Assembly: GCA_965285935.1 (NCBI GenBank) | Contig: OZ260661.1 | Coordinates: forward strand, 136,772,001 to 136,836,000 | Length of the DNA stretch: 64,000 nucleotides | Source: Ophelia neglecta | Taxonomy: Eukaryota | Direction: 5' to 3' | In this document: one piece after another, positions 7,918-39,447 of the stretch | How positions within the stretch are numbered: the first letter of the stretch is position 1 | Layout: the number at the start of each line of letters is the position of its first letter | Position numbers and translations under genes: made by a program | The notes under the pieces: model-generated | The model's database searches: none | The model's input: only the letters and a program-made list of their open reading frames with translations | What the model was told of the DNA's origin: nothing

Positions 7918-10900
7918 ATGGCATCTTTCACCAACCATATACGGGCTATGCTCGACCCAAATCTCCATAATGCCTAGTAAGGATTATAAGATAAATGAAA
8001 TTGAGCTAGTTGAAGAGTCCCATTACTATTCAGGCGCTGAGATAGGACCCCTGTGTCAACGTGCAACATAGAACGAATCCTTGGCCAGCATGAATTTAAA
8101 CGCCCAAATTCTTGTCAGTAAACTAACTGAATTTCAACTTCTCTTACACGAGTTCAAAACCATCCACGCTGTTGCGATTGACGTGGTCACAGTAACTGAA
8201 ACTTGGTTAAATACCGACCTGGAGCAGCTTGTAAATATTCCTGGATATTCACTTGTATGTAAAAACAAACCGGTAAAGAAGGAGGGTGGAGGCACATGTG
8301 TTTACATTAGAGATGAGGTACCTTTTAAAGTGAGAAATGATCTCGATTTCACGGCTAATCATGATAATTATATCGATGGTCTGTTTATTGAAATAACTCT
8401 TAATATGAATAAGAAACCCCTGGTGATAGGGACTATATATCGATCCCCTAGCAAGAATAATATACAGGAGCTTTCAGATCGCATTGAGGACAAGATTCGT
8501 CGGATAGAATGCGAAGGGAAAAATTGTATTATATGTGGCGATATGAACATTGACCTGTTAAACTCAACCCCAAACAGAGATACAGCAAATTACCTTGGCA
8601 TGTTCATATCAAACAGCTACATTCCCCTTATAACTCTGCCAACTAGAGTCACCGCGCACTCTGCTACGTTGCTAGATAACATATTTCTTAAACACAATCC
8701 TTCAATATCCTACACTGCAGGAACGCTACTCACTCACCTTTCAGATCATTACCCAAATTTCGTATTCATTCATGACTTAATAATTACTGGGTATAAGCTC
8801 CCTAAATTTGTTAAGTATAGGCCGCTTACCGACACAAATGTTTATTCTTTTAAGCAGGGCCTTAGCAATGTAAACTGGGACCCAGTATTAAACATTGCCA
8901 AAGATAATCCAGACATTGCATACGACGTTCTTTTGAACACCTTCAATGCAAAATTGGATGAGTGCATACCTGAAAAAGAGGTGCGGTTCTTTAAGTATAA
9001 ACACAAAATTAGCCCATGGGTTACGCAAGGTATTCTGAAATCCATTCACACACGAGACCACTCAGGTAGGAAACGTGCCCTTAATCGAGACATGCCCGCT
9101 TTCAATGACGTTAATAAGAAGTTTATAGACTATCGTAACATATTAGATAGGGTTATCAAATCTGCTCAGACCGCGTACTGGGGAGTCAGGTTTAACGATG
9201 CCAAAAATGACATTAAAATAATCTGGGACAATATTCGACCGGTAATGAATAGGGGCAAGAGGGAAAAGTTGCAAACAGTATTTCTCGATGGTGACGGCAA
9301 CAAACTAACTGACCCGGAAAAGATAGCCCAAAACCTTAATACCTTTTTCGCAAATATCGGAACTAGGCTGGCAGATTCGATATCATCTACGACGAATTGC
9401 AAATCCTATCTGAACTCACCAAAAATAGATAGTATGTTTATGTCGGAAACGAATTAATTCGAAATACTCAAATTGTAGACAAAATGAAACCAAAATCTAG
9501 TAGTGGATTCGATAATATTACACCTCGCCTGCTTAAAATGACCATTGCCCCCATGGCTGCAGTGCTTGCAACTATATTTAATTCTATGATCAAACACGGA
9601 GTATTTCCTGATTCTGCAAAAATTGCAAAGGTACTTCCTATTTTCAAAGATGGAGATTCATCGATATTTACAAATTATAGACCCATATCAATACTCCCGG
9701 CGATCTCGAAGATTCTTGAAAGATTGATATACAATCGCATTTTCAATTACCTAACTAGATTTAATCGTTTATATAAATCACAATATGGCTTTCGAGCAAA
9801 ACACTCTACGGAGCATGCAGCACTTGAATTACTTGATCATATTGCTAAAGGCCTGGACGATAAATATTTAATGTCTGCCATTGACATAGACTTGTCCAAA
9901 GCGTTCGACACATTTGGACCACTCCATACTTCTTCATAAATTGGATTATTACGGGATCAGGGGTAATTATAATAAGCTACTTGAGAGCTATTTATCTTCT
10001 CGTAAACAATATGTCTTTTATTGTAAAGTATCATCGCACATGCTGCATATTAAATGCGTTGTACCACAGGGATCTATACTGGGGCCTCTGCTCTTTCTAA
10101 TATATGTGAACGACCTCTGTTACACTTCTCCTATAGCGCATACCCTATTATTTGCTAATGATACCAGTATTTTGTTCCGTAATAGAGATATAATTGATAT
10201 GTATACGGATATGAATATAGAAATTGAAAACATATATACCTGGTTAAAATCAAATAAATTGTCCTTAAATATCCGAAAAACTAAATACATGTTATTTCGC
10301 ATAAGCCATTACCAGCATTCCATAGTACGCTAAATGTCATGGTGAATGGTAACCCTATTGAGCAAGTATCAAAATTTAAATTCCTGGGTATCTGGTTCGA
10401 TTAACACCTTAACTGGAAACCAAACACTGACGCAAAATGCAAACAAATAGCCAAAATAAATGGGGTCATGAATAGCATTAAACGAAAATTACCTTGTAAA
10501 ATTCTCAAGCTTATCTATTATGCTCTTGTCCAGTCACAACTTACTTATGGTTTATTAGTGTGGAACAATGATTGTTATAAAATGAACCTGGACAGACTTT
10601 TCTTAGTACAAAAACGTTCTATGCGCATTATCACCAAATCTCACTATCTAGCTCATACGGACCCAATTTTTAAATCATTGGGTATCCTCAAGCTGCATGA
10701 TTTACATCTGCAAACTTTACACTCGAGTAATGATTAAAAAATGTCCTGTATATTTAGTAAGCTGCCTATTGTCAAACCCTGTATCCCATACTCATAATAC
10801 TCGATATCGAAATGTAATACAGTTGGATAATATGCGAACAAATGTAATTAAACAAGATATATCTTACAAATTGAATAGTATAATTATATACATTCGACAA

Positions 10901-25269: not shown

Positions 25270-28200
25270 TTAGGTTAGGTTTATTAACTCGCGGCCTCAT
25301 ATGAGACATGGAGTACAAACACTTCTACAAATACACATATATACATAAAATACTTAACAGGTGGATCTAGTAGGCTATAGAAATACACTTTTAATTGAAC
25401 AGCCTCAGCACTCTGCCAAGAAATAGGGACAATTTAAATTGAGACCGTATAGAATTAAACAGATTAACAAATTTAAACATGCTAGGACGGCTGTGACAAA
25501 ATGATGGTAGATATTTTCTACGTAATTCTCTAATAGTTTCGTGCTTACATTCGAGGACGACATGGTATTCATCACCCAAAATACCATCACTACACATTGT
25601 ACAAATACGCTCTGACCTTGGTATCTGGTGATACCAGCCTATTTCCACGGGCAGGCGGTGATTACTCGTACGAAATCTACAAAGATTAAATCCTAAAAAT
25701 TCCTGGGCAATTCGGTGAGGTAGGTTTCGTAAGAGTGTACACTTTTAAATGTTTTATAGGTTACACATAATGACTACTGGATAATTGTTCGCGTCACCTC
25801 TGACTATCTTGATCAGCTAAGATTCTATGTGATTCTTTAAACATTTGGTATTTACACCTACACCTTTGGAGTCAAAGATATTCGGGCAACCACATTGTTC
25901 GAGCGTTCTCTTGATGCAGTTTAGCCACGGACTTGTATACATTCCAGGCTCGTGTATTCTATTCAGATAACAAAGAACAATGTGACTCAGTTTAGAGTCT
26001 TAACCCTGTACAGTCCGAGCGCAAAAGGCGACCATTTTCTAGCTTTAATACAAACTGACATTGGGTGCCTTTCAGTTTTTCTGTATATCATATTGTTGCA
26101 AGTAGATTTTTTCAGCATAAGAAGGTATTTACAAAACCGTAAATGCAGGCGCTCTATCAAATCACTGTTACAGAATCCCCATACCTCACAACCGTAGGTT
26201 AGGATAGGAGCAACTAGTACATCAAAAAGCTCAAACGTTAATTTAATTGGCCATCGGAGGCTATTAGACCTACTGAGTAGTGACATCATAGCTCTTGATG
26301 CCTGATCGACAAGATTTTTGATACACAATTTAAAAATACCATTAAACCTGAAGACAATACCCAAATATTTGAAGTGCTCTACAATTTCAAGGGCTTTGTT
26401 TCCCAATTTAAAAGAACAGTTGTTGGGTCTCCGTTTACCAAAAACGCAAACTTTGGTTTTGAAGCATTAATCGTTAGATTCCATTTCTTACAATACCCAT
26501 TCAAATTATCAAGTCCTTTCTGCAGCTTTTCAGCGGTATTGGCAAAGAGAACGGTGTCATCGTCATACATTATCACAATAAATTTCATCATACACTGAGC
26601 ATCAATAAAAATGCCTTCATTTGCCTCCGATTCTAAATAATCTTCGAGGTCATTTATAAATAAGGAAAATAACAGTGGTGATAAGTTCTCACCCTGCCTT
26701 ACACCGGCCATATTAACAAAATAATCAGTCATTTTACCATTACTTATGACACATGATTTAACATTGCGATACAGGGACATTATAACTTTGACTATTTTAG
26801 ATTCCTTACTGAGACCTTGGTAATCTAGTTTCCACCAGAGTGCCTGACGCCAGATTTTATCGAAAGCTTTCTATAAAAGCGGTGCATCATCCCATCAATA
26901 ATAGACTTAAACAAAAATACATGGTCAGTTGTATTATAACCCTTGCGGAAGCCAGCTTGGTTTTCGCTCAGCAGGTTGTTTTCCTCAACAAATACATGCA
27001 GTCTACTATTTAATGCAGAGGTGAATTATTTACCTAAACAAGACAACAGTGTTATGTCCCGATAGTTAGATGGGTCTGATGCGTCCCCTTTATGCTTGTA
27101 GATAGGAAGAATGAGACCTACTGTTCAACTCTCAGGGATAATTCCTTGTGACAATATTTCATTAAATAGTCTTAGATAAACTGGCATGAGTAGAACTCGG
27201 CTATTTATTATGAACTCATTAATGGTGGGATCCACCCCACTTGACTTTTCTTTCTTTAAATTACCAATTGCTTGTTGCAACTCATCTGCCGTAAATGGGC
27301 GGTCAAGCGAGGTGAAGTCAATACAAGCAGAACCCCCTTCTCTATCTAACGTATTGTTGATATTCGAGTTATCTTTACCCAGATGATTGAAATGGTGGTA
27401 TAGATCTTGTAAGGTAGCTTTAACATGGGTTTTCTTTTTGCATTGTAGGATTCTCCAATATTCTTTACAGTTAGACTTTCTTAGGTTTGAGAGACGAGCC
27501 CGTAATTTTCTGTCAGTCTCAGCCTGAGCCTTTTGTCGCTCTCGTTTTAAAGTTTGACTGTTACGAACCAAGTCAACATGAGCTCTTTTTGACTTATGGC
27601 GTGAGTGATGGCGTCTAGCTGGATTATAATCAAGCTTAGCATTTTTATAATCAATGCTTTCAAAGACAACTTTATTTGTGGCTGCTCTGCTTGCGCTGTT
27701 CTTATCGTTACAATTTGGTTTTGGAAAAGTTTTAATCGCACTATCCAAGAGTATTGACGCCGCTAATGTCGTGACCTCATTAATATCAATGATTGTTTCA
27801 AAGTCAAGTTTCCGGATAAGTGAATCAATTTGGTTAACATCCAAATTGTTAATGAATTCATTTTTCTTTTCATTTTTCCAAAAAGCAAAAGGTTTTATAT
27901 AAGTTGTTAATGAAAGATTCTCCGTCTCATTACTTAAGATATCATTAGTAGTGGCGTTGGGATCTCTCCCAGGGAGACTTAGAGTGACTTCAATCGGGCA
28001 GTGCACGTCTGAATACAGTGGGTCAAAATGTAGCACTTCCAGGTGAGACACCAGTGATGCGATTGAAGGTGACCCAATAACATAGTCGACAACTGTGCCG
28101 AGCTTGGTTGTGGCAGCACCAATGTCACGGTCCTTGCCTATACGGCCATTGAATATAACTATCGAAGAATTCATACAGATTTCCAATAGGCGGTCACCAT

Positions 28201-28940
28201 ATTGCTGATCTTTTGAAATATCAACTGATTTTCTGACAACTTGTATACCTGTAGACGTTAATAATTGTCTAGTATTGAACATGCTAATCGTGCTTTCATC
28301 AACTCCTAATTCATCGAAAAGTCTTTCACCGATAGTGAGCATGTCACTTCTACGACCAGTGTGAGCATTCAAGTCACCCAGTATCAAATAATAATTAGTA
28401 TCTACGCCGTATTCTACTATGTTCTGTTCGAAATCTTTAAACATGTCAATATTGGAGTATTTAGAAGTCCTCGGTGGTATATACACATTACAGAGAAGCA
28501 TAATTCTGTCTAAACCACTTAATTCACTCGACACTTCAAACCATTGGCTAAAATTATTGGGGCTGCTATATTTTATATATTTAACAATGTTTTGCTTAAA
28601 TGCAACGATTAGACCACCAGACGCTTTACGTGCAAGTTTTGTTCTGTTATTTACATAAATAGCAAACTCATATTTCATGAATTCTGCAGTAATCTTTTCA
28701 ATATATGTGTCATCTAATTTAGTTTCTTGCAAGCATATAATATCGTAGTCATTTACATAACTCAGGAATTCCAATTTCCCTTTTAGCCCACCAATATTTA
28801 TATTTAAAATCTTTAGGCGCCTGCAGAAACATGCATTGCATTCTTGGGTCTGTACTCCTTCGGATTCCTATCTACTGTCATCGGGGGTCGAGTCCGCCAG
28901 CACCTCGAATCTATTTCGGGTAGCGGGATCGGCATTCGTT
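25270..28940 (-). mobile_element. 5'-truncated non-LTR retrotransposon, RTE-X-like
   Basis: End of ORF1 (RNRFEVLAD) followed by APE-RT ORF2 with a C-terminal Cys/His motif. 3' end is AATAAA plus (CCTAA)2. 5' boundary is approximate and no TSD was seen. Confidence 0.88.
25391..28867 (-). pseudogene. Disrupted LINE ORF2 (APE + RT + C-terminal Cys/His knuckle)
   Basis: LKILNINIGG, ICLQETK, NVYIPP, GDLNAH, VVDYVI, SDVHCP; GVRQGENLSPLLFSLFINDL, YDDDTV (YADD altered), YGCEVWG, IERLHLRFCK; ERICTMC...GDEYHVVLEC. Spread over ORFs 27125-28774, 26379-26780, 25987-26406 and 25391-25648 with stops and frameshifts. Confidence 0.9.
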
Positions 28941-31277: not shown

Positions 31278-32603
31278 TTGAAGTACTTTGGTGATCTAAT
31301 CTCCAGGAAGAACACAAACAACAAGAGGAAAGAAAAGGTGGCCGAAGATATTTTTAGCCTGTTCCTGTATATCGAGGGGGACTATACAATCGACCTTAGC
31401 AAACTGGTAGCCAGTAAAGATAGGGATAAATTCCAACAGTCGTTGGTTGGATCTGAAGTCCTTGTCGACAACAACACTGATTTATCTAGGCACCATAACG
31501 GAACACCCGATGGCGAAGTCCTTTCTAGTTTGGATGAAAACCACGACGCTGTAGCTGCAGCTAAGTCGGGTGACCGGGTAACTGCCAATATTGTTACTAG
31601 CACCTTGGCGGGTTTTCCTGGAGAAGCCACTGTACCGACAGGATTCTCCGACCCTCTACGTGCACTGTGTTCAGATATGATTACTTTAAACCGACAGCTT
31701 CAAGCACAGATTTCTCTACTGATGACTGAGAACAACTCACTCAGAGCAGAAAACAGACTTTTCCAAGAGAAATCAATGGAAATGAGAAATGATATTGACT
31801 CTATGAAAGTGAAGCTGAGAGAACTTGAAGTGACTGGAAAATTGGAGAGAGAATCAAACGAAAAAGTTAAGAAGACGGTTGATTTGATGGACGGCTCAGT
31901 GAATGCCATCCTATACAAATTGTTTGCCGGTGACTCAAAGATAGCTGTCGCCAATATGATGCAGAAGGCAAAAACCACACCAGATGCCAACCAATCTCAG
32001 ACCGACAGGCAGGAGGGCTTTTCTAGACCAGACGGTCCCATTATCTCGGGCCCTCCACCAGCAAAGCCCAGGTCAGACAGTGACATTGGGATAGTGTTCG
32101 GTATCCTGAGTCAGTTGGGCAAAGGTGGCGCAAGAAAAATTCCTACCGGCGCGGAGAGTGAGACGGAAGAACGCGGAGTTTCGCCCAATGACGACCGGGA
32201 CCCAGATGACTTTTCATCTCATGAAGAGAACGTCGCAGCTCGAGACATTCTGGAGGGTTTCACACCTGCAGACGGCATGGTACAGGTTGAAAACGAGACA
32301 GATGAAAACAATGACACTTTAGAGGGTTTTACTCCTGTACAGCGTAGACCCAGAGCTAAAGCTATTTATGTAGGCAGTGTAAAGATAAAAAGGTCTCTCG
32401 ATAATACACAGAGAGTATTGTTAAACTATCTGACAGACAAACAAGTTCATGTGACCCATTGTGTATTTTATAAGAAGTCTGGTCAATACCTGTCGTTCAA
32501 AGTAAACGTAGCCGCAGCGCATTATGAAACTGTGTCAGATCCATCCTTCTGGCCTGGGAATCTGAAAGTACGACAGTGGGAGTACAGACAGTCTAAAGAT
32601 TAA
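31278..32603 (+). CDS. LINE ORF1 protein (coiled coil + C-terminal RRM-like domain)
   Basis: 441-aa open frame with a heptad-rich central region and C-terminal SFKVNV...DPSFWPGNLKVRQW, typical of invertebrate LINE ORF1. It lies directly upstream of ORF2. The start codon is TTG in the track, so the true N-terminus is uncertain. Confidence 0.8.
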   Translation: MKYFGDLISRKNTNNKRKEKVAEDIFSLFLYIEGDYTIDLSKLVASKDRDKFQQSLVGSEVLVDNNTDLSRHHNGTPDGEVLSSLDENHDAVAAAKSGDRVTANIVTSTLAGFPGEATVPTGFSDPLRALCSDMITLNRQLQAQISLLMTENNSLRAENRLFQEKSMEMRNDIDSMKVKLRELEVTGKLERESNEKVKKTVDLMDGSVNAILYKLFAGDSKIAVANMMQKAKTTPDANQSQTDRQEGFSRPDGPIISGPPPAKPRSDSDIGIVFGILSQLGKGGARKIPTGAESETEERGVSPNDDRDPDDFSSHEENVAARDILEGFTPADGMVQVENETDENNDTLEGFTPVQRRPRAKAIYVGSVKIKRSLDNTQRVLLNYLTDKQVHVTHCVFYKKSGQYLSFKVNVAAAHYETVSDPSFWPGNLKVRQWEYRQSKD

Positions 32604-32605
32604 GA

Positions 32606-35600
32606 ATGGCCCATAGTCTAATTAAAATAAGTACATTTAACTGTTGGGGTTCTATGGCTTCGGCCAATTATATTTGTTCTCTTCTTAAGAAAACAGATGT
32701 GTTGTGCTTGCAGAAACACCATTTAAGACCAGAAAATTTGTCCTTTTTAAATTCACTTAATCTAGATTTTGATGCTTTCTCAAGAGTAGATGATCGAATG
32801 TATACACTGAGGCATGGGAAAGCAGGTGGGGTTGCTATTTTGTGGAGAAAGTCTCTCGGGTACGCAGTGTCTAAGCTGCATGACTGTGGTGATGACAGAA
32901 TACTGGGCATTCAAATAGCATGTCCAAATCAGACCCAATATATATACTTGTTTAGTGTATATCTACCTAGTAGTAACCATGGTGATGAAGAGTATCTCCA
33001 GAGTCTAGCTAAGCTAGAAGATGTATATGAATACTATAGTTCTCGTGGAATTGTTATCATTTGTGGGGATCTTAATGCCCAAATGGGGTTAGATGCAGGT
33101 CCTAATGGTTCACAAATATGTACCCGGAGAGGTCAAATGCTGCAGAATTATCTTGTTAGAATGAATGTGAAATCTATTAATTGTTCTGAAATTTTTACTG
33201 GTCCAAAGTGGACATACCGGGGACATGGTGACTTAAAATGTTCACAGATCGACCACATTTGTATACCGGGAGAGTATGTACATGTTGTAGAAAGTTGTTC
33301 TGTTGGGCCGGATTCTTCCTATAACACTTCTGATCACCTAGTAGTTAATTGTACGCTCAGATTCACCCTTGTCGCATTCGATGATGTAAGGCGAAAATTT
33401 CTGAATTGGCGAAATGGTGACACGGAATCCTATGCAAATATGAATAACTTTAGATTAATGGAATTATTTCGAAATTTTGAATTAAACACACTCGCGCCGA
33501 TACCACCAGCCACTATAGACAGACAATGTGAAGCTCTCATCGCGATCATGAGTAGTAGTGCACAGCAGTATTTTCCTGTGTCTAATGCTGTCCATTATCA
33601 GAATTCTTACTGGGATTAGGAACTGAACACGGCTCACGCCAAGCAAAATGCCTTGCGTAAAGCATGGAAGGACCAAGGATCGCCGAGAGGGAAGGAACAC
33701 CAGTTGTTTAGAAGTTATAAAGACGCAAAGACTAAATTTAGAATAATGCAGTACCTAAAAATTAAAAAGCGCGAAGAAGACCGCATGGCTAAAGTTGACG
33801 GCGAGATAGATCTGGTAGCTTTTTGGCGCTTCGTCAGGAGTCGCAGGGAGCCCCAAGAGAGTTTCCACATCATTAACGATAGTGAGAACACTTATACCAA
33901 CCCTGATGAGCTTCGAACGTTCTGGGCTACACACTTTGCCACACTGTTAAACGAGCAACAATGGGAATCGTCCAATTACGATAACGATTTTGCTGAAGCC
34001 GTACAGGCTGAAGTAGGAGACATTCTCAGTGACGCACACACTCAAGAAGACAATACGGGCATATTTGAAACAAAAATTACAGCCGAGGAAGTCCGTAAAA
34101 CGGCAAGGAAACTCCCAAACGGTATAGCTCCAGGCAAAGACTTTATAACATATGAACATTTGAGGTACGGAGGACATGTGTTGTATGAAGTGCTGGCCTA
34201 TTTATACAATAACATGATCCATCAAGTTCACATACCACAGTCATTCAAGAACGGTGTCCTCGTGCCCTTGTATAAGGGGAAGAAGAAACCGAAGGACAGT
34301 AAGGATTCGTACAGAGGAGTGACTTTAATGCCCGTTTTGAACAAATTGCTTGAAAAAAATTGTTGCTGAACGTATGAAACCATGGCTTTTGGAGAAGCAG
34401 TTTCCCAACAAACTGCAGCACTCTAAACCACAGTCGAGTAGCCTTCTCCTCTCCTTCTCCATACAGGAGGCTATACTACTCTTTGTGGAGCGTGGTAGCA
34501 GGGTATATGCGGCTTTTCTGGATGCAGAGAAGGCATTTGACAGAGTCTGGTGGAGTGCACTCTTGCTTAAGTTGTACCGACTTGGAGTAAAGGGATCTCC
34601 ATGGCTGCTTTTCCGCGAGTGGCTTATTGGATCGGAGATGTCTGTTATGTTGAGCGGCGTGCTTTCTCAACCCTTCTCTATCTCCAGAAGTATTAAGCAG
34701 GGAGGCATTTTATCTACGTTCATGCATGCGGTGGCGTACTGTGATTTTTACGACTGCATGTTGGAGACTGAGCGCGGGCTTCGATTGTCGGGCATTGACC
34801 TGGGTAGTCCTACTCTGGCGGATGATAGTGCGCTACTTTCCTGTACACGAAACAGCCTCCAGTTGATGCTCGATGCTGCTAGTGAGTACGCCAGGCGGTG
34901 GCGGCTGAAGTTCTCGTCCTCCAAAAGCAAAGTAATTGTGTTCGGCGAAAGTAAACACCAGACTGTGAAGAACAGTAATTGGCGTAAGTGGTGGCTAAAC
35001 GGTCAACAAATCGAGGAAGTCTACTCTGAGACCTATGTCGGTATCATTCTCACCTCTGACTTCAGGTCTGCCATGAGAACTCACTCAGCCTGTGTGAAGG
35101 GTAGATGTCAGCTGGCCGGTATGGCTTGGGTCGGTGTGACCGCAACTGGACTCAACCCAATAGTATCGGCCAGATTATGGCGGCAGGTTTGTTTGCCTTC
35201 GGCACTTCATGGCGCGGAACTGTGGTCAAATTTGACACTATCTGAAGTGACTGAGTTGGAGGCCATGCAAAGACATGCAGCTAAATCTATCCAGGGGTTC
35301 TTACGTAGAACACACACCTTGACAGCTTTGGGTACGCTTGGTTGGCTTTCAATAGAGTGTGAAATTGATGGTAAAAAGTTAATGTTTTTGCATAGGATTT
35401 CTACACTAGAACCAGATCGCCACTTAGCCAGTCAATTGTTTCTATTTAGATTAACTGACCGTTCAAATGTGCCTGAACAGAGAGGGTTTATTCCCGAGAT
35501 AATACGTTTTTTTGCTGAAATACGGTCTTAACGAGTTTGTCGATGATGTTACTTCTGTTAGTAAATTGTCTAGGCGTAAGTGGAAGTTTATTGTTTCATC

Positions 35601-38692: not shown

Positions 38693-39447
38693 TATTATAC
38701 AACTAAGAAACTTCTCCGAGGGGACTAGTCCAAACAATTTGCCCCGAGGGAGGTGACCAGTGAACTATTTCCCGAGACCGAAGGTCGAGGGAAATAGTTC
38801 ACTGGTCACCTCCCGAGGGGCAAATTGTTTGGACTAGTCCCCGAGGGGCAAGTTTCATAGTTGTTTTATTATACATCATTGAAAAATCTTTGCACATTTA
38901 ACATCTCTATTGGTTCTATGCTCTAGATAGATCTATAGATTGTTTTACCTATTGTTCCATTACTGCAATAAAAATGTACACCATTATATGGAAAACAATA
39001 AATGCTGCAAACCTTGCCATTATCAGATTATTCAGCTGTTATTGATGTTCCGGGATCCCGCCGCGTTTGTTTTACGTTCGAAGTAGAGCTATGCGCATGG
39101 TTTCGTATTTATTGAACCCGCGTTTTCGGCAACATAGTCCAATTTTAAACGTGCAAATATATTTGAATAATGTATATTCTTATTTATTATCTTACTTTTT
39201 ATAAACCTGAAACAATTGACTGTAGTTTGTTTGGAAAATACTAATACGACAATAAAAATGGTGGTTTCGTTAGTGAAGTGCGTAAATTAGCCACACGAGG
39301 CCGCCACTGCTAGCCATGCGCTAGTTTCACGAACTAGTCCCCGGGACTAGTTCGTGAAACTAGCGTACGGCTGGGAAACTAGGCGATTCTAACCAACACC
39401 ATTCAACCAATCACAGGGCGGGATTTTTCAATGATGTATAATAAAAC
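38693..39447 (+). mobile_element. Non-autonomous foldback element with two hairpins and an internal complementary repeat
   Basis: Hairpin 1 spans 38699-38864 (~80-bp arms) and hairpin 2 spans 39319-39365 (23-bp arms). A perfect 26-bp inverted repeat links 38863-38888 and 39422-39447. Termini carry TATTATAC and GTATAATA. No ORF. Confidence 0.8.

What the first reader, a model, noticed from the sequence alone, without database searches (positions are those of the whole stretch)
38699..38864. Long hairpin with repeated tandem G.A mismatches: a strand-specific ssDNA structure
Seen: ~80-bp arms around GACC-GAA-GGTC (38776-38786). Across the inner ~65 bp the arms pair perfectly except at three places, and each is CGAG opposite CGAG, i.e. 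tandem 5'-GA-3'/5'-GA-3' (38774-75/38787-88, 38746-47/38815-16, 38718-19/38843-44). Ordinary mismatches occur only in the outermost ~17 bp. Established: Py-GA-Pu tandem sheared G.A pairs and C(GAA)G mini-loops are unusually stable in single-stranded DNA, whereas the complementary strand would have TC/TC mismatches and a TTC loop. Inference: three identical mismatches are unlikely to be random decay. The element looks selected to fold on the + strand only while avoiding a perfect dsDNA palindrome, which points to a single-stranded DNA intermediate in its mobility.
Basis: partly seen in the sequence, partly recalled or inferred. Interest (0 to 1): 0.85.

Follow-up and report, generated by a model that had tools for sequence, protein, structure and literature searches.

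The report
Crypton transposon's conserved G·A-mismatch hairpin
The hairpin is real: it is the end-piece of a young, still mobile Crypton (tyrosine-recombinase) transposon, and related Cryptons of sea urchins, oysters and other animals carry the same long hairpin with the same paired G·A mismatches while the stem letters change in step, so it is a selected and apparently undescribed DNA structure.

Summary
Observation confirmed. Window 38699-38864 folds as a 166-nt hairpin with a C(GAA)G apex and three CGAG/CGAG tandem mismatches 28 nt apart.

It is the end of a 749-bp repeat (38696-39444). About 78 copies, 98-100% alike, lie in this 762-Mb genome. The window copy has no target duplication and an exact empty allele in the same sample.

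A 2,436-bp version carries an intact 480-aa tyrosine recombinase (DUF3504 plus Phage_integrase, Cre/QRICH1-like fold). The family is therefore a Crypton, not a Helitron or MITE. The hairpin lies downstream of the gene, 3 nt from the crossover point. An inverted copy of the other end precedes it.

Copies within the genome are too alike to show selection. Homologous Cryptons elsewhere (Diadema, Magallana, metagenome contigs; 15 hairpin clusters) keep the architecture:
- 26 of 27 stem pairs covary.
- 31 of 40 two-by-two loops are TC/TC on the gene strand, which reads GA/GA on the other strand.
- Apex loops read GNA or GNNA on that other strand.
- The orientation is fixed, 17 to 0.

So the mismatches are selected and strand-asymmetric. 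A single-stranded DNA step, like integron attC or CTX phage sites, is plausible but unproven. The feature appears undescribed for Cryptons.

The parts
38693..38695 (.). Target-side triplet TAT. This is flanking DNA, not part of the element.
   Evidence: The empty allele joins 38695 to 39445. Paralogous empty sites keep TAT. The triplet varies among copies: about 20 TAT, 6 TAG, 3 TAA, 1 CAT.
38696..39444 (-). Whole non-autonomous Crypton copy, 749 bp. Its gene sense is the window's minus strand. It is an internal-deletion derivative of the 2,436-bp autonomous element.
   Evidence: Contigs skip exactly 749 bases with no ambiguity. Alignment to L061:701-3136 matches 38696-39003 and 39001-39444 at 99-99.6%.
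38696..38701 (-). 3'-terminal hexamer, TGTATA on the gene strand. It is the reverse complement of positions 5-10 of the 5' end.
   Evidence: The same hexamer ends the hairpin side in L064 and L065.
38699..38864 (+). 166-nt terminal hairpin. The GA/GA version is on the + strand, which is the strand opposite the recombinase gene.
   Evidence: Homologous hairpins in 15 sequence clusters from other assemblies.
38776..38786 (+). Apex: 4-bp stem GACC/GGTC and GAA triloop (38780-38782) closed by C.G.
   Evidence: The apex module is conserved in relatives. CCGAAGG is named as a mini-hairpin sequence in PMC13037366.
38773..38776 (+). Inner tandem mismatch: CGAG opposite CGAG at 38786-38789, 4 bp from the loop.
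   Evidence: A site 3-4 bp from the apex is present in nearly all related hairpins.
38745..38748 (+). Middle tandem mismatch: CGAG opposite CGAG at 38814-38817, 32 bp from the loop.
   Evidence: Relatives have a site 22-32 bp from the apex.
38717..38720 (+). Outer tandem mismatch: CGAG opposite CGAG at 38842-38845, 60 bp from the loop.
   Evidence: Relatives have sites 45-60 bp from the apex.
38736..38736 (+). Copy-specific A that pairs with T38826. The family consensus has T, which gives a T.T mismatch.
   Evidence: High-depth contigs read T here.
38866..38888 (-). Subterminal inverted copy of the 5' end (23 nt exact, 26 nt with 38863-38865), directly before the hairpin on the gene strand.
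   Evidence: (I3). The same arrangement occurs in L064 (46 nt), L066 (38 nt) and L067 (23 nt).
39001..39003 (.). Breakpoint of the 1,685-bp internal deletion that removed the recombinase gene.
39312..39372 (.). Second, 61-nt palindrome near the 5' end. It shares the motif GGGACTAGT with the main hairpin and is kept in the 369-bp mini-elements.
   Evidence: (I2).
39422..39444 (-). 5'-terminal repeat. The gene strand starts TTATTATACATC.

Best explanation
Shown:
- The hairpin is the conserved 3'-terminal cis element of an active family of animal Cryptons, DNA transposons moved by a tyrosine recombinase of the DUF3504 / CryptonA kind.
- The window holds a 749-bp non-autonomous copy (38696-39444). 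It is inserted without target duplication and is heterozygous in the sequenced sample.
- On the gene strand the element reads: 5' end repeat, small palindrome, (recombinase gene in the 2,436-bp form), inverted copy of the 5' end, 166-nt hairpin, TGTATA-3'.
- Stem letters are free to change as long as they pair. The tandem mismatches (TC/TC on the gene strand, GA/GA on the other) and the G..A-closed apex loop are held constant across relatives whose recombinases share 35-54% of residues with this one. They are therefore selected.

Inferred, about 40% likely:
- The structure works as folded DNA. The strand opposite the gene forms an almost continuous helix, because Y-GA-R tandem pairs and C(GNA)G loops stack well in DNA.
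- Folding or extrusion removes 166 nt from the path and brings the recombinase-binding inverted repeat next to the crossover point.
- In the joined-ends form (circle or tandem junction) the end repeat, its inverted copy and the hairpin make one ~230-nt hairpin. The crossover point sits where the 23-bp stem meets a 3-nt internal loop. This layout resembles folded integron attC and CTX-phage attP(+) sites.
- One strand would be exchanged and the product completed by replication.
For: Identity:
- 480-aa ORF in L061:1270-2712(-), with PF12012 at 41.9 bits (cut-off 29.7) and PF00589 at 29.2 bits (cut-off 27.1).
- Invariant RGRENLR box, K203, H291-x-x-R294 and Y326 in 15 homologues.
- AlphaFold model confident over residues ~1-348. 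Best fold matches are QRICH1 (9hjt_H, E 2.4e-7) and Cre (1nzb_A, E 3.3e-6), and also integron integrase 2a3v_C.
- 264 homologues named KIAA1958-like, ZMYM2-like or DUF3504.

Mobility:
- About 78 copies, with 369-bp to 2.4-kb length variants that share both ends.
- An exact empty allele and paralogous empty sites.
- A head-to-tail dimer.

Selection on the structure: as summarised above. Closing pairs of the mismatch covary between the two arms (CTCG/CTCG 18, TTCG/CTCA 6, CTCA/TTCG 4). A double-stranded binding motif would not need that.

DNA rather than RNA: only 3 of 321 pair cells are G.U-type, against 101 double changes.

Folded junction: (-99.2 and -96.6 kcal/mol).

Single crossover point: in about 28 independent copies the 5' junction always keeps the element's TTAT. 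The 3' junction always carries target letters, with no mixed forms.

Arm-to-arm templated changes of a whole mismatch appear in one copy here and in L074 against L076-L078.
Against: - No experiment supports the model, and no RNA or circle data were found (one search lists no RNA run, and the runs are contigs of one sample).
- Inside this genome conservation says nothing, because all copies descend from a recent master.
- Only 18 of 33 external loci with enough downstream sequence show the hairpin.
- Site spacing is not constant (about 4, 22-32 and 45-60 bp from the apex).
- The energy model does not separate the two strands.
- Single mismatches show no strand bias (G.T 8 against A.C 13, p = 0.38).
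- No source of single-stranded DNA is known for Cryptons, whose accepted model is a double-stranded circle (PMC3212892, PMC13465315).
- A few closing pairs break the Y-GA-R rule (CTCC/GTCG, CTCT/ATCG).
Confidence: 0.6

Rival explanations
1. The hairpin acts as RNA. It could be a structured 3' UTR of the recombinase mRNA (UC/UC loops, UUC loop), or an antisense transcript with GA/GA pairs that regulates the element or yields small RNAs.
For: The hairpin lies about 380 nt downstream of the stop codon on the gene strand. Rfam gives weak hits that resemble microRNA precursors. Tandem G.A pairs are also stable in RNA (own knowledge).
Against: All Rfam hits are far below gathering scores (best 37.5 against 59). 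Stems almost never pass through G.U states (3 of 321 cells), which is unusual for a selected RNA helix. The apex fits the DNA GNA/GNNA mini-hairpin rule rather than RNA GNRA/UNCG loops. The hairpin is kept, with both ends, in gene-less mini-elements that have spread. No RNA run holds the locus.
Confidence: 0.12
2. The structure works in double-stranded DNA only. It would be a cruciform or an array of oriented CCTCGG-like protein sites, and the mismatches exist merely to keep a long palindrome from being unstable.
For: Long perfect palindromes are unstable in cells (own knowledge). The consensus around each site is C-C-T-C-G-G. The six sites are in direct orientation.
Against: Any mismatch would break a palindrome, yet 31 of 40 two-by-two loops are the same TC/TC pair, with Y..R neighbours that covary between arms. 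26 of 27 stem pairs covary, which requires intrastrand pairing at some stage. The orientation is fixed 17 to 0.
Confidence: 0.15
3. The folded strand is a priming signal, like a single-strand origin or the ssiA signal, that turns a single-stranded copy into duplex DNA. It would not be a recombination site.
For: The + strand apex CCGAAGG is the very mini-hairpin named in the plasmid ssiA signal, and such motifs sit at single-strand replication origins (PMC13037366). Single-strand origins of rolling-circle plasmids are long, orientation-specific imperfect palindromes (own knowledge).
Against: There is no evidence of a single-stranded Crypton copy and no replication gene in the element. The position 3 nt from the crossover, and the inverted end copy beside it, point to recombination.
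Confidence: 0.08
4. The element is a Helentron/Helitron-type rolling-circle transposon (HINE), and the hairpin is its 3' termination signal.
For: No target duplication, a subterminal inverted repeat followed by a 3' palindrome, and tandem copies. HINE anatomy is described in PMC4067079. The genome holds 86 Helitron_like_N matches.
Against: The full-length element encodes a tyrosine recombinase and nothing else. None of 24 Rep loci holds the ends. The termini are not TC...CTRR, and the insertion is not between A|T or T|T.
Confidence: 0.02
5. The hairpin is a neutral relic, for example a fold-back insert that hitch-hiked, and the three like mismatches are chance.
For: All copies in this genome descend from one recent master, so their agreement is uninformative.
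Against: The structure, mismatch type, apex and orientation are conserved across echinoderm, mollusc and metagenome relatives.
Confidence: 0.03

Closest known systems
Animal Cryptons (CryptonA, DUF3504 tyrosine-recombinase DNA transposons; Kojima and Jurka 2011, PMC3212892; Glomhopper 2026, PMC13465315)
   Same: A single gene for a tyrosine recombinase with a DUF3504 domain. No reverse transcriptase or DDE enzyme. No target duplication, and a crossover at a very short shared motif (TA-N). Abundant non-autonomous deletion derivatives.
   Different: Those papers report no terminal repeats for animal Cryptons and poorly conserved ends for fungal CryptonA, and neither mentions a hairpin. This lineage has a 23-46-nt end repeat with a subterminal inverted copy, and a 140-180-nt terminal hairpin with fixed tandem mismatches.
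Folded single-strand substrates of tyrosine recombinases: integron attC sites and CTX-phage attP(+) (own knowledge; IntI-attC structure 2a3v appears among the fold matches)
   Same: An imperfect palindrome whose structure is conserved rather than its sequence. Fixed unpaired features mark one strand. The crossover lies next to a mismatched region between two helices. There is a single crossover point and no duplication.
   Different: This element is eukaryotic, with a much longer stem (~80 bp) and tandem G.A pairs instead of extrahelical bases. The recombinase is a different family. Single-strand exchange has not been shown.
Helentron / HINE (DINE-1-like) termini (PMC4067079)
   Same: A subterminal inverted repeat followed by a 3' palindrome, no target duplication, and tandem copies.
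   Different: Those stems are 5-10 bp and the enzyme is Rep/helicase. Here the enzyme is a tyrosine recombinase, and neither the termini nor the target match.
DIRS retroelements with an internal complementary region (described in PMC13465315)
   Same: A tyrosine-recombinase element in which an internal segment is complementary to a terminus, which could bring the ends together in a single strand.
   Different: DIRS elements encode reverse transcriptase and make cDNA. This element has no such gene.
Mini-hairpin DNA GCGNAGC / GCGNNAGC and tandem sheared G.A pairs (PMC13037366, PMC3201870)
   Same: The apex reads C(GAA)G here and GC-GCA-GC, GC-GTCA-GC and GC-GATA-GC in relatives on the GA strand. 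Mismatch neighbours are mostly Y-GA-R.
   Different: Those are short synthetic or origin-associated motifs. Here they crown and punctuate a long transposon hairpin. Stability was not measured.

Membership tests
Crypton (tyrosine-recombinase DNA transposon), CryptonA/DUF3504 group | Encodes a tyrosine recombinase with the catalytic R..K..H-x-x-R..Y set | tested here: met
   PF00589 at 29.2 bits (cut-off 27.1) and PF12012 at 41.9 bits (cut-off 29.7). Invariant RGRENLR box, K203, H291, R294 and Y326. Cre/QRICH1-like fold. Two identical intact copies and one frameshifted copy in the genome.
Crypton (tyrosine-recombinase DNA transposon), CryptonA/DUF3504 group | No reverse transcriptase, DDE transposase or Rep in the element | tested here: met
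   The 2,436-bp element holds one long ORF. The other ORFs of 60 aa or more overlap it.
Crypton (tyrosine-recombinase DNA transposon), CryptonA/DUF3504 group | No target-site duplication; ends share only a short motif with the target | tested here: met
   The empty allele joins 38695 to 39445 with zero ambiguity. Paralogous empty sites agree. The flank is TA-N on one side and the element's own TAA on the other.
Crypton (tyrosine-recombinase DNA transposon), CryptonA/DUF3504 group | Absence of terminal inverted repeats (descriptive rather than defining) | tested here: not met
   A 23-nt end repeat has an exact subterminal inverted copy. Relatives have 23-46 nt.
Crypton (tyrosine-recombinase DNA transposon), CryptonA/DUF3504 group | Extrachromosomal circular intermediate | not testable with these tools
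   Only contigs of one sample were available. A chromosomal head-to-tail dimer has the expected junction.
Helitron / Helentron (HINE) | Autonomous partner with Rep/helicase sharing the termini | tested here: not met
   No end match in 24 Rep loci. The full-length element encodes a tyrosine recombinase.
Helitron / Helentron (HINE) | Termini 5'-TC...CTRR-3' with A|T insertion, or T|T insertion for Helentrons | tested here: not met
   The ends are TTATTATAC...TGTATA on the gene strand. Flanking bases vary.
Cut-and-paste MITE / fold-back element | Target-site duplication of fixed length | tested here: not met
attC / CTX-type folded single-strand recombination site (function, not ancestry) | Structure conserved with free stem sequence and fixed strand-marking irregularities | tested here: met
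attC / CTX-type folded single-strand recombination site (function, not ancestry) | Only one folded strand is recombined; the product is completed by replication | not testable with these tools
   Indirect only: sharp, unmixed junctions in about 28 copies and the crossover at a stem/internal-loop boundary of the folded junction.
Known RNA family (Rfam 15) | Match at the family's gathering score | tested here: not met
   Best hits were 44.7 against 83 and 37.5 against 59, all generic hits that resemble microRNA precursors.

The most novel reading that the evidence does not exclude
Animal Cryptons recombine through a folded single-stranded (or extruded) DNA site. The strand opposite the recombinase gene folds into a long G.A-punctuated hairpin that assembles the recombination site at the joined ends. 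One strand is exchanged and replication finishes the job. This would be the first eukaryotic counterpart of integron attC and CTX-phage recombination, and the first mechanistic handle on Crypton transposition.
Probability: 0.3. Interest if true: 0.9.

Novelty: new variant of a known kind. Interest (0 to 1): 0.75.

Why it matters
Cryptons are the least understood class of eukaryotic DNA transposons. Their ends are described as hard to define, animal Cryptons are reported to have no terminal repeats, and no transposition step has been reconstituted.

This locus provides three things:
- Exact ends, an empty allele, an intact autonomous copy and about 78 young derivatives, among them a 369-bp mini-element. 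Together these are a ready experimental system.
- A conserved terminal architecture shared across animal phyla.
- A strand-asymmetric structural code (tandem G.A pairs and a GNA-type apex) that can be tested directly with oligonucleotides and a single 480-aa enzyme.

Crypton recombinases also gave rise to the vertebrate ZMYM, QRICH1 and KIAA1958 genes. The DNA shape their ancestors recognised may therefore inform what those domains bind.

Tried and rejected
1. Helentron/HINE reading, my first hypothesis. Dropped after one search found no ends near Rep genes and searches found that the full-length element encodes a tyrosine recombinase.
2. TA duplication (Tc1/mariner-like) and TWA duplication (PIF/Harbinger-like) readings of the flanks. 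Rejected by the empty sites.
3. Hairpin as a separate fold-back element inserted with a 9-bp duplication of TATTATACA. Rejected because all copies carry the hairpin with both ends, and relatives in other species have the same layout.
4. Search of this genome for other families with the same six-site geometry but another apex base. No hits; the backwards control gave 8.
5. Covariation within the family. No power: only 4 substitutions fall in 31 hairpins, and those copies were chosen as the best matches to the hairpin.
6. Strand asymmetry from nearest-neighbour energies. Uninformative.
7. Wobble bias of single mismatches. None found.
8. Sequence search of solved structures with the recombinase profile. 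No match; the fold search worked.
As a result the other recombinase families of this genome (35-37% identity) and copy C12:47384248 could not be read. I did not try to get those letters another way.

Full report
**1. The observation**

Window 38699-38864 is a 166-nt hairpin. As single-stranded DNA the + strand folds at -80.8 kcal/mol, z = -20 against shuffles.

Its inner ~65 bp are interrupted only by three 2x2 loops. Each is CGAG opposite CGAG, at 38773-76/38786-89, 38745-48/38814-17 and 38717-20/38842-45, 28 nt apart on each arm. The apex is GACC-GAA-GGTC.

One nuance concerns position 38736. It is A in this copy and pairs with T38826. The family consensus has T there, so the master sequence has a fourth interruption, T.T.

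**2. What the hairpin belongs to**

The hairpin is repeated. The window lies at C1:136772001-136836000 of a 762-Mb, 223-contig genome. The 40 scored matches are 98-100% identical.

The repeat unit runs from 38696 to 39444. Length variants range from 369 bp to 2.4 kb, and all share both ends.

The 23-nt end sequence occurs 78 times forward and 77 times reverse, with 0 for the control. That means about 78 elements, each with two copies of it: one at the end (39422-39444) and one inverted just inside the hairpin (38866-38888).

Contigs from the sample that holds this stretch join 38695 directly to 39445. They skip 749 bases with no ambiguity, at a depth like that of the unique flanks. The insertion is therefore heterozygous or polymorphic, its borders are exact, and there is no target duplication.

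Two paralogous empty sites for another copy say the same. The flank next to the hairpin end is usually TA-N (about 20 TAT, 6 TAG, 3 TAA). The other end of the element is always ...ATAA. One locus has two copies joined head to tail, precisely end to end.

**3. First hypothesis, and why it fell**

No duplication, a subterminal inverted repeat followed by a terminal palindrome, and tandem copies together look like a Helentron-derived HINE. The genome also has 86 Helitron_like_N matches.

None of 24 Rep loci contains the ends. The three longest family members settle the matter. They lie at C1:138.74 Mb and C1:138.80 Mb (identical to each other) and on C7 (frameshifted).

Each is 2,436 bp and carries a single 480-aa ORF on the strand corresponding to the window's minus strand. 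The ORF hits DUF3504 (41.9 bits) and Phage_integrase (29.2 bits), both above their curated cut-offs.

Fifteen homologues share an invariant RGRENLR box, K203, H291-x-x-R294 and Y326. The AlphaFold model is confident over residues ~1-348. It matches QRICH1 and Cre recombinase, and more weakly Xer, integron and Tn1549 integrases.

The 264 homologues with E below 1e-10 are at most 55% identical. Those that carry names are from sea urchins, oysters, corals and similar animals, and are labelled KIAA1958-like, ZMYM2-like or DUF3504.

The family is therefore an animal Crypton (CryptonA type). The window copy is the autonomous element minus 1,685 bp, with the breakpoint near 39001-39003.

**4. Is the odd hairpin selected?**

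Inside this genome the copies are too similar to tell. I therefore fetched homologous recombinase genes with their flanks from other assemblies: Diadema setosum (L063), Magallana gigas (L065), GCA_013332995.1 (L064), two ENA contigs, and 79 metagenome or assembly contigs.

*The same architecture recurs.* An end repeat lies upstream of the gene. Its inverted copy lies 270-720 nt downstream of the gene match. A 115-180-nt hairpin follows directly. In L064 and L065 the terminus after the hairpin is TGTATA.

*How widespread it is.* The hairpins fall into 15 clusters below 75% identity. Of 33 loci with at least 1,100 nt after the catalytic tyrosine, 18 have the hairpin.

*Stems covary.* An alignment of the inner 65 nt of 12 hairpins (A2), scored against the common structure, gives:
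- 91% paired cells;
- 26 of 27 pairs with compensatory changes;
- 0 of 500 shuffles as good;
- 30-45% pairing when the partner is slid.

*Mismatches are fixed.* The mismatch dinucleotide itself is invariant. After de-duplication, 31 of 40 two-by-two loops are NTCN/NTCN on the gene strand. Five more are the CpG-decay forms with TT.

Their closing pairs covary between the arms: CTCG/CTCG 18, TTCG/CTCA 6, CTCA/TTCG 4. The sites lie about 4, 22-32 and 45-60 bp from the apex.

*Orientation is fixed.* A strict apex signature (TC, 3-5-bp stem, 3-4-nt loop, stem, T[CT], good flanking pairing) is found in 17 loci on the gene strand and in none on the other strand, over 274 kb.

So the mismatches are selected, and their polarity relative to the gene is fixed. 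In the window the GA version is on the + strand, opposite the gene.

**5. Which strand, and DNA or RNA?**

On the strand opposite the gene the mismatches read Y-GA-R in most cases. The apex loops there read GAA, GCA, GTCA and GATA, closed by C.G.

The literature on hand describes GCGNAGC and GCGNNAGC as extraordinarily stable DNA mini-hairpins with a sheared G-A pair. It states that only GNA triloops form them, and it names CCGAAGG in the plasmid ssiA priming signal (PMC13037366; PMC3201870). That Y-GA-R tandem pairs are stable in DNA rests on my own knowledge. On the gene strand the same places are T.C/C.T mismatches and TNC loops, which have no known stabilising role.

I could not test this asymmetry. 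The DNA parameters available give +1.3 and +1.7 kcal/mol for the two loop types and the same value for both triloops.

Against an RNA role:
- G.U-type states are almost absent from the stems (3 of 321 cells).
- Rfam gives only sub-threshold hits that resemble microRNA precursors.
- The hairpin is retained in gene-less mini-elements that have spread.

Single mismatches show no strand bias. They look like plain decay.

**6. How it may work (inference)**

Three facts place the hairpin at the recombination site:
- Its base is 3 nt from the crossover point.
- The inverted copy of the other end abuts its other side.
- At the natural head-to-tail junction, which equals the expected circle junction, both strands fold into one ~230-nt hairpin. 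The 23-bp end:inverted-copy stem stacks on the long hairpin, and the crossover point lies exactly where that stem meets a 3-nt internal loop.

Folding or extrusion would thus bring the recombinase-binding repeat to the terminus. In relaxed duplex DNA the repeat is 170 bp away.

The junctions are also sharp. In about 28 independent copies the element side is constant and the target side is target-like, with no mixed forms.

Tyrosine recombinases cut the two strands 6-8 bp apart (own knowledge). With unlike partners, a two-strand exchange should leave a heteroduplex that segregates into mixed junctions. Their absence fits exchange of a single strand followed by replication, as in integron attC x attI and CTX-phage integration.

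Two templated conversions of a whole mismatch to the complement of the other arm suggest that the arms do meet in vivo. One is in copy C12:47384248. The other is L074 against L076-L078.

I put about 40% on folded DNA acting as part of the recombination site and about 30% on true single-strand recombination. The rivals are an RNA role, a purely double-stranded role with mismatches for palindrome stability, and a priming signal. They are scored in their own sections.

**7. Comparison with what is known, and novelty**

Kojima and Jurka (PMC3212892) found no terminal repeats in animal Cryptons. The 2026 CryptonA paper (PMC13465315) calls the ends variable or poorly conserved and never mentions a hairpin. 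Full-text searches for Crypton with hairpin or palindromic found no description.

The element is a member of a known superfamily. The terminal architecture and its G.A code appear to be new, and they suggest a variant mechanism.

**8. Verdict**

- Observation: confirmed.
- Interpretation: partly supported. Selection and strand polarity are supported; a single-stranded intermediate is not shown.
- Novelty: new variant of a known kind.
- Interest: 0.75.

Noticed in passing
window 39312-39372: A second, 61-nt palindrome lies near the 5' end of the element, with one A.C and one G.T mismatch. It shares the motif GGGACTAGT with the main hairpin and is kept in the 369-bp mini-elements. L064 has a comparable small palindrome after its end repeat.
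   Followed up: partly
L061:2690-3136 (minus strand), equivalent to window ~39001-39444: The 5' region of the element holds an ATTGG (CCAAT-box-like) motif just inside the end repeat. A TATAAAAAG lies about 180 nt before the recombinase ATG. This is a likely promoter.
   Followed up: no
G000 contig C19, 1-530 kb (L034-L045): About 18 Helitron_like_N matches sit inside open frames of 2,214-2,238 aa, spaced 27-32 kb apart in two oppositely oriented blocks. This looks like a large array of intact Helitron/Helentron-type genes.
   Followed up: no
window 8081-9457, 27125-28774, 31278-35531: These are non-LTR retrotransposon ORFs (endonuclease and reverse transcriptase). The window is repeat-rich intergenic DNA.
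   Followed up: partly
G000 C1:138068231, C1:19103088, C1:148764422, C9:445408, C1:148090888 and others: Further Crypton-type recombinase genes with open frames of 460-520 aa, only 35-37% identical to this family.
   Followed up: no
L134:1111-1427: A 317-nt hairpin with a CGAG/CGAG loop, that is, the opposite orientation, lies upstream of another Crypton gene on a metagenome contig. It may be a neighbouring element in inverted orientation.
   Followed up: no
L074:3692-3854 against L076-L078: Within one foreign family, one copy has both outer TC/TC sites converted to perfect pairs while its relatives keep the mismatches. This looks like arm-to-arm templated repair.
   Followed up: partly
L063:4992-5224: The Diadema locus has a second, AT-rich 230-nt imperfect hairpin about 200 nt beyond the Crypton hairpin. 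It has many single mismatches and no TC/TC sites, and its nature is unknown.
   Followed up: no
G000, control: The six-site pattern read backwards (GAGC at the same spacings) has 8 matches in the genome. This hints at some other 28-nt-periodic repeat.
   Followed up: no
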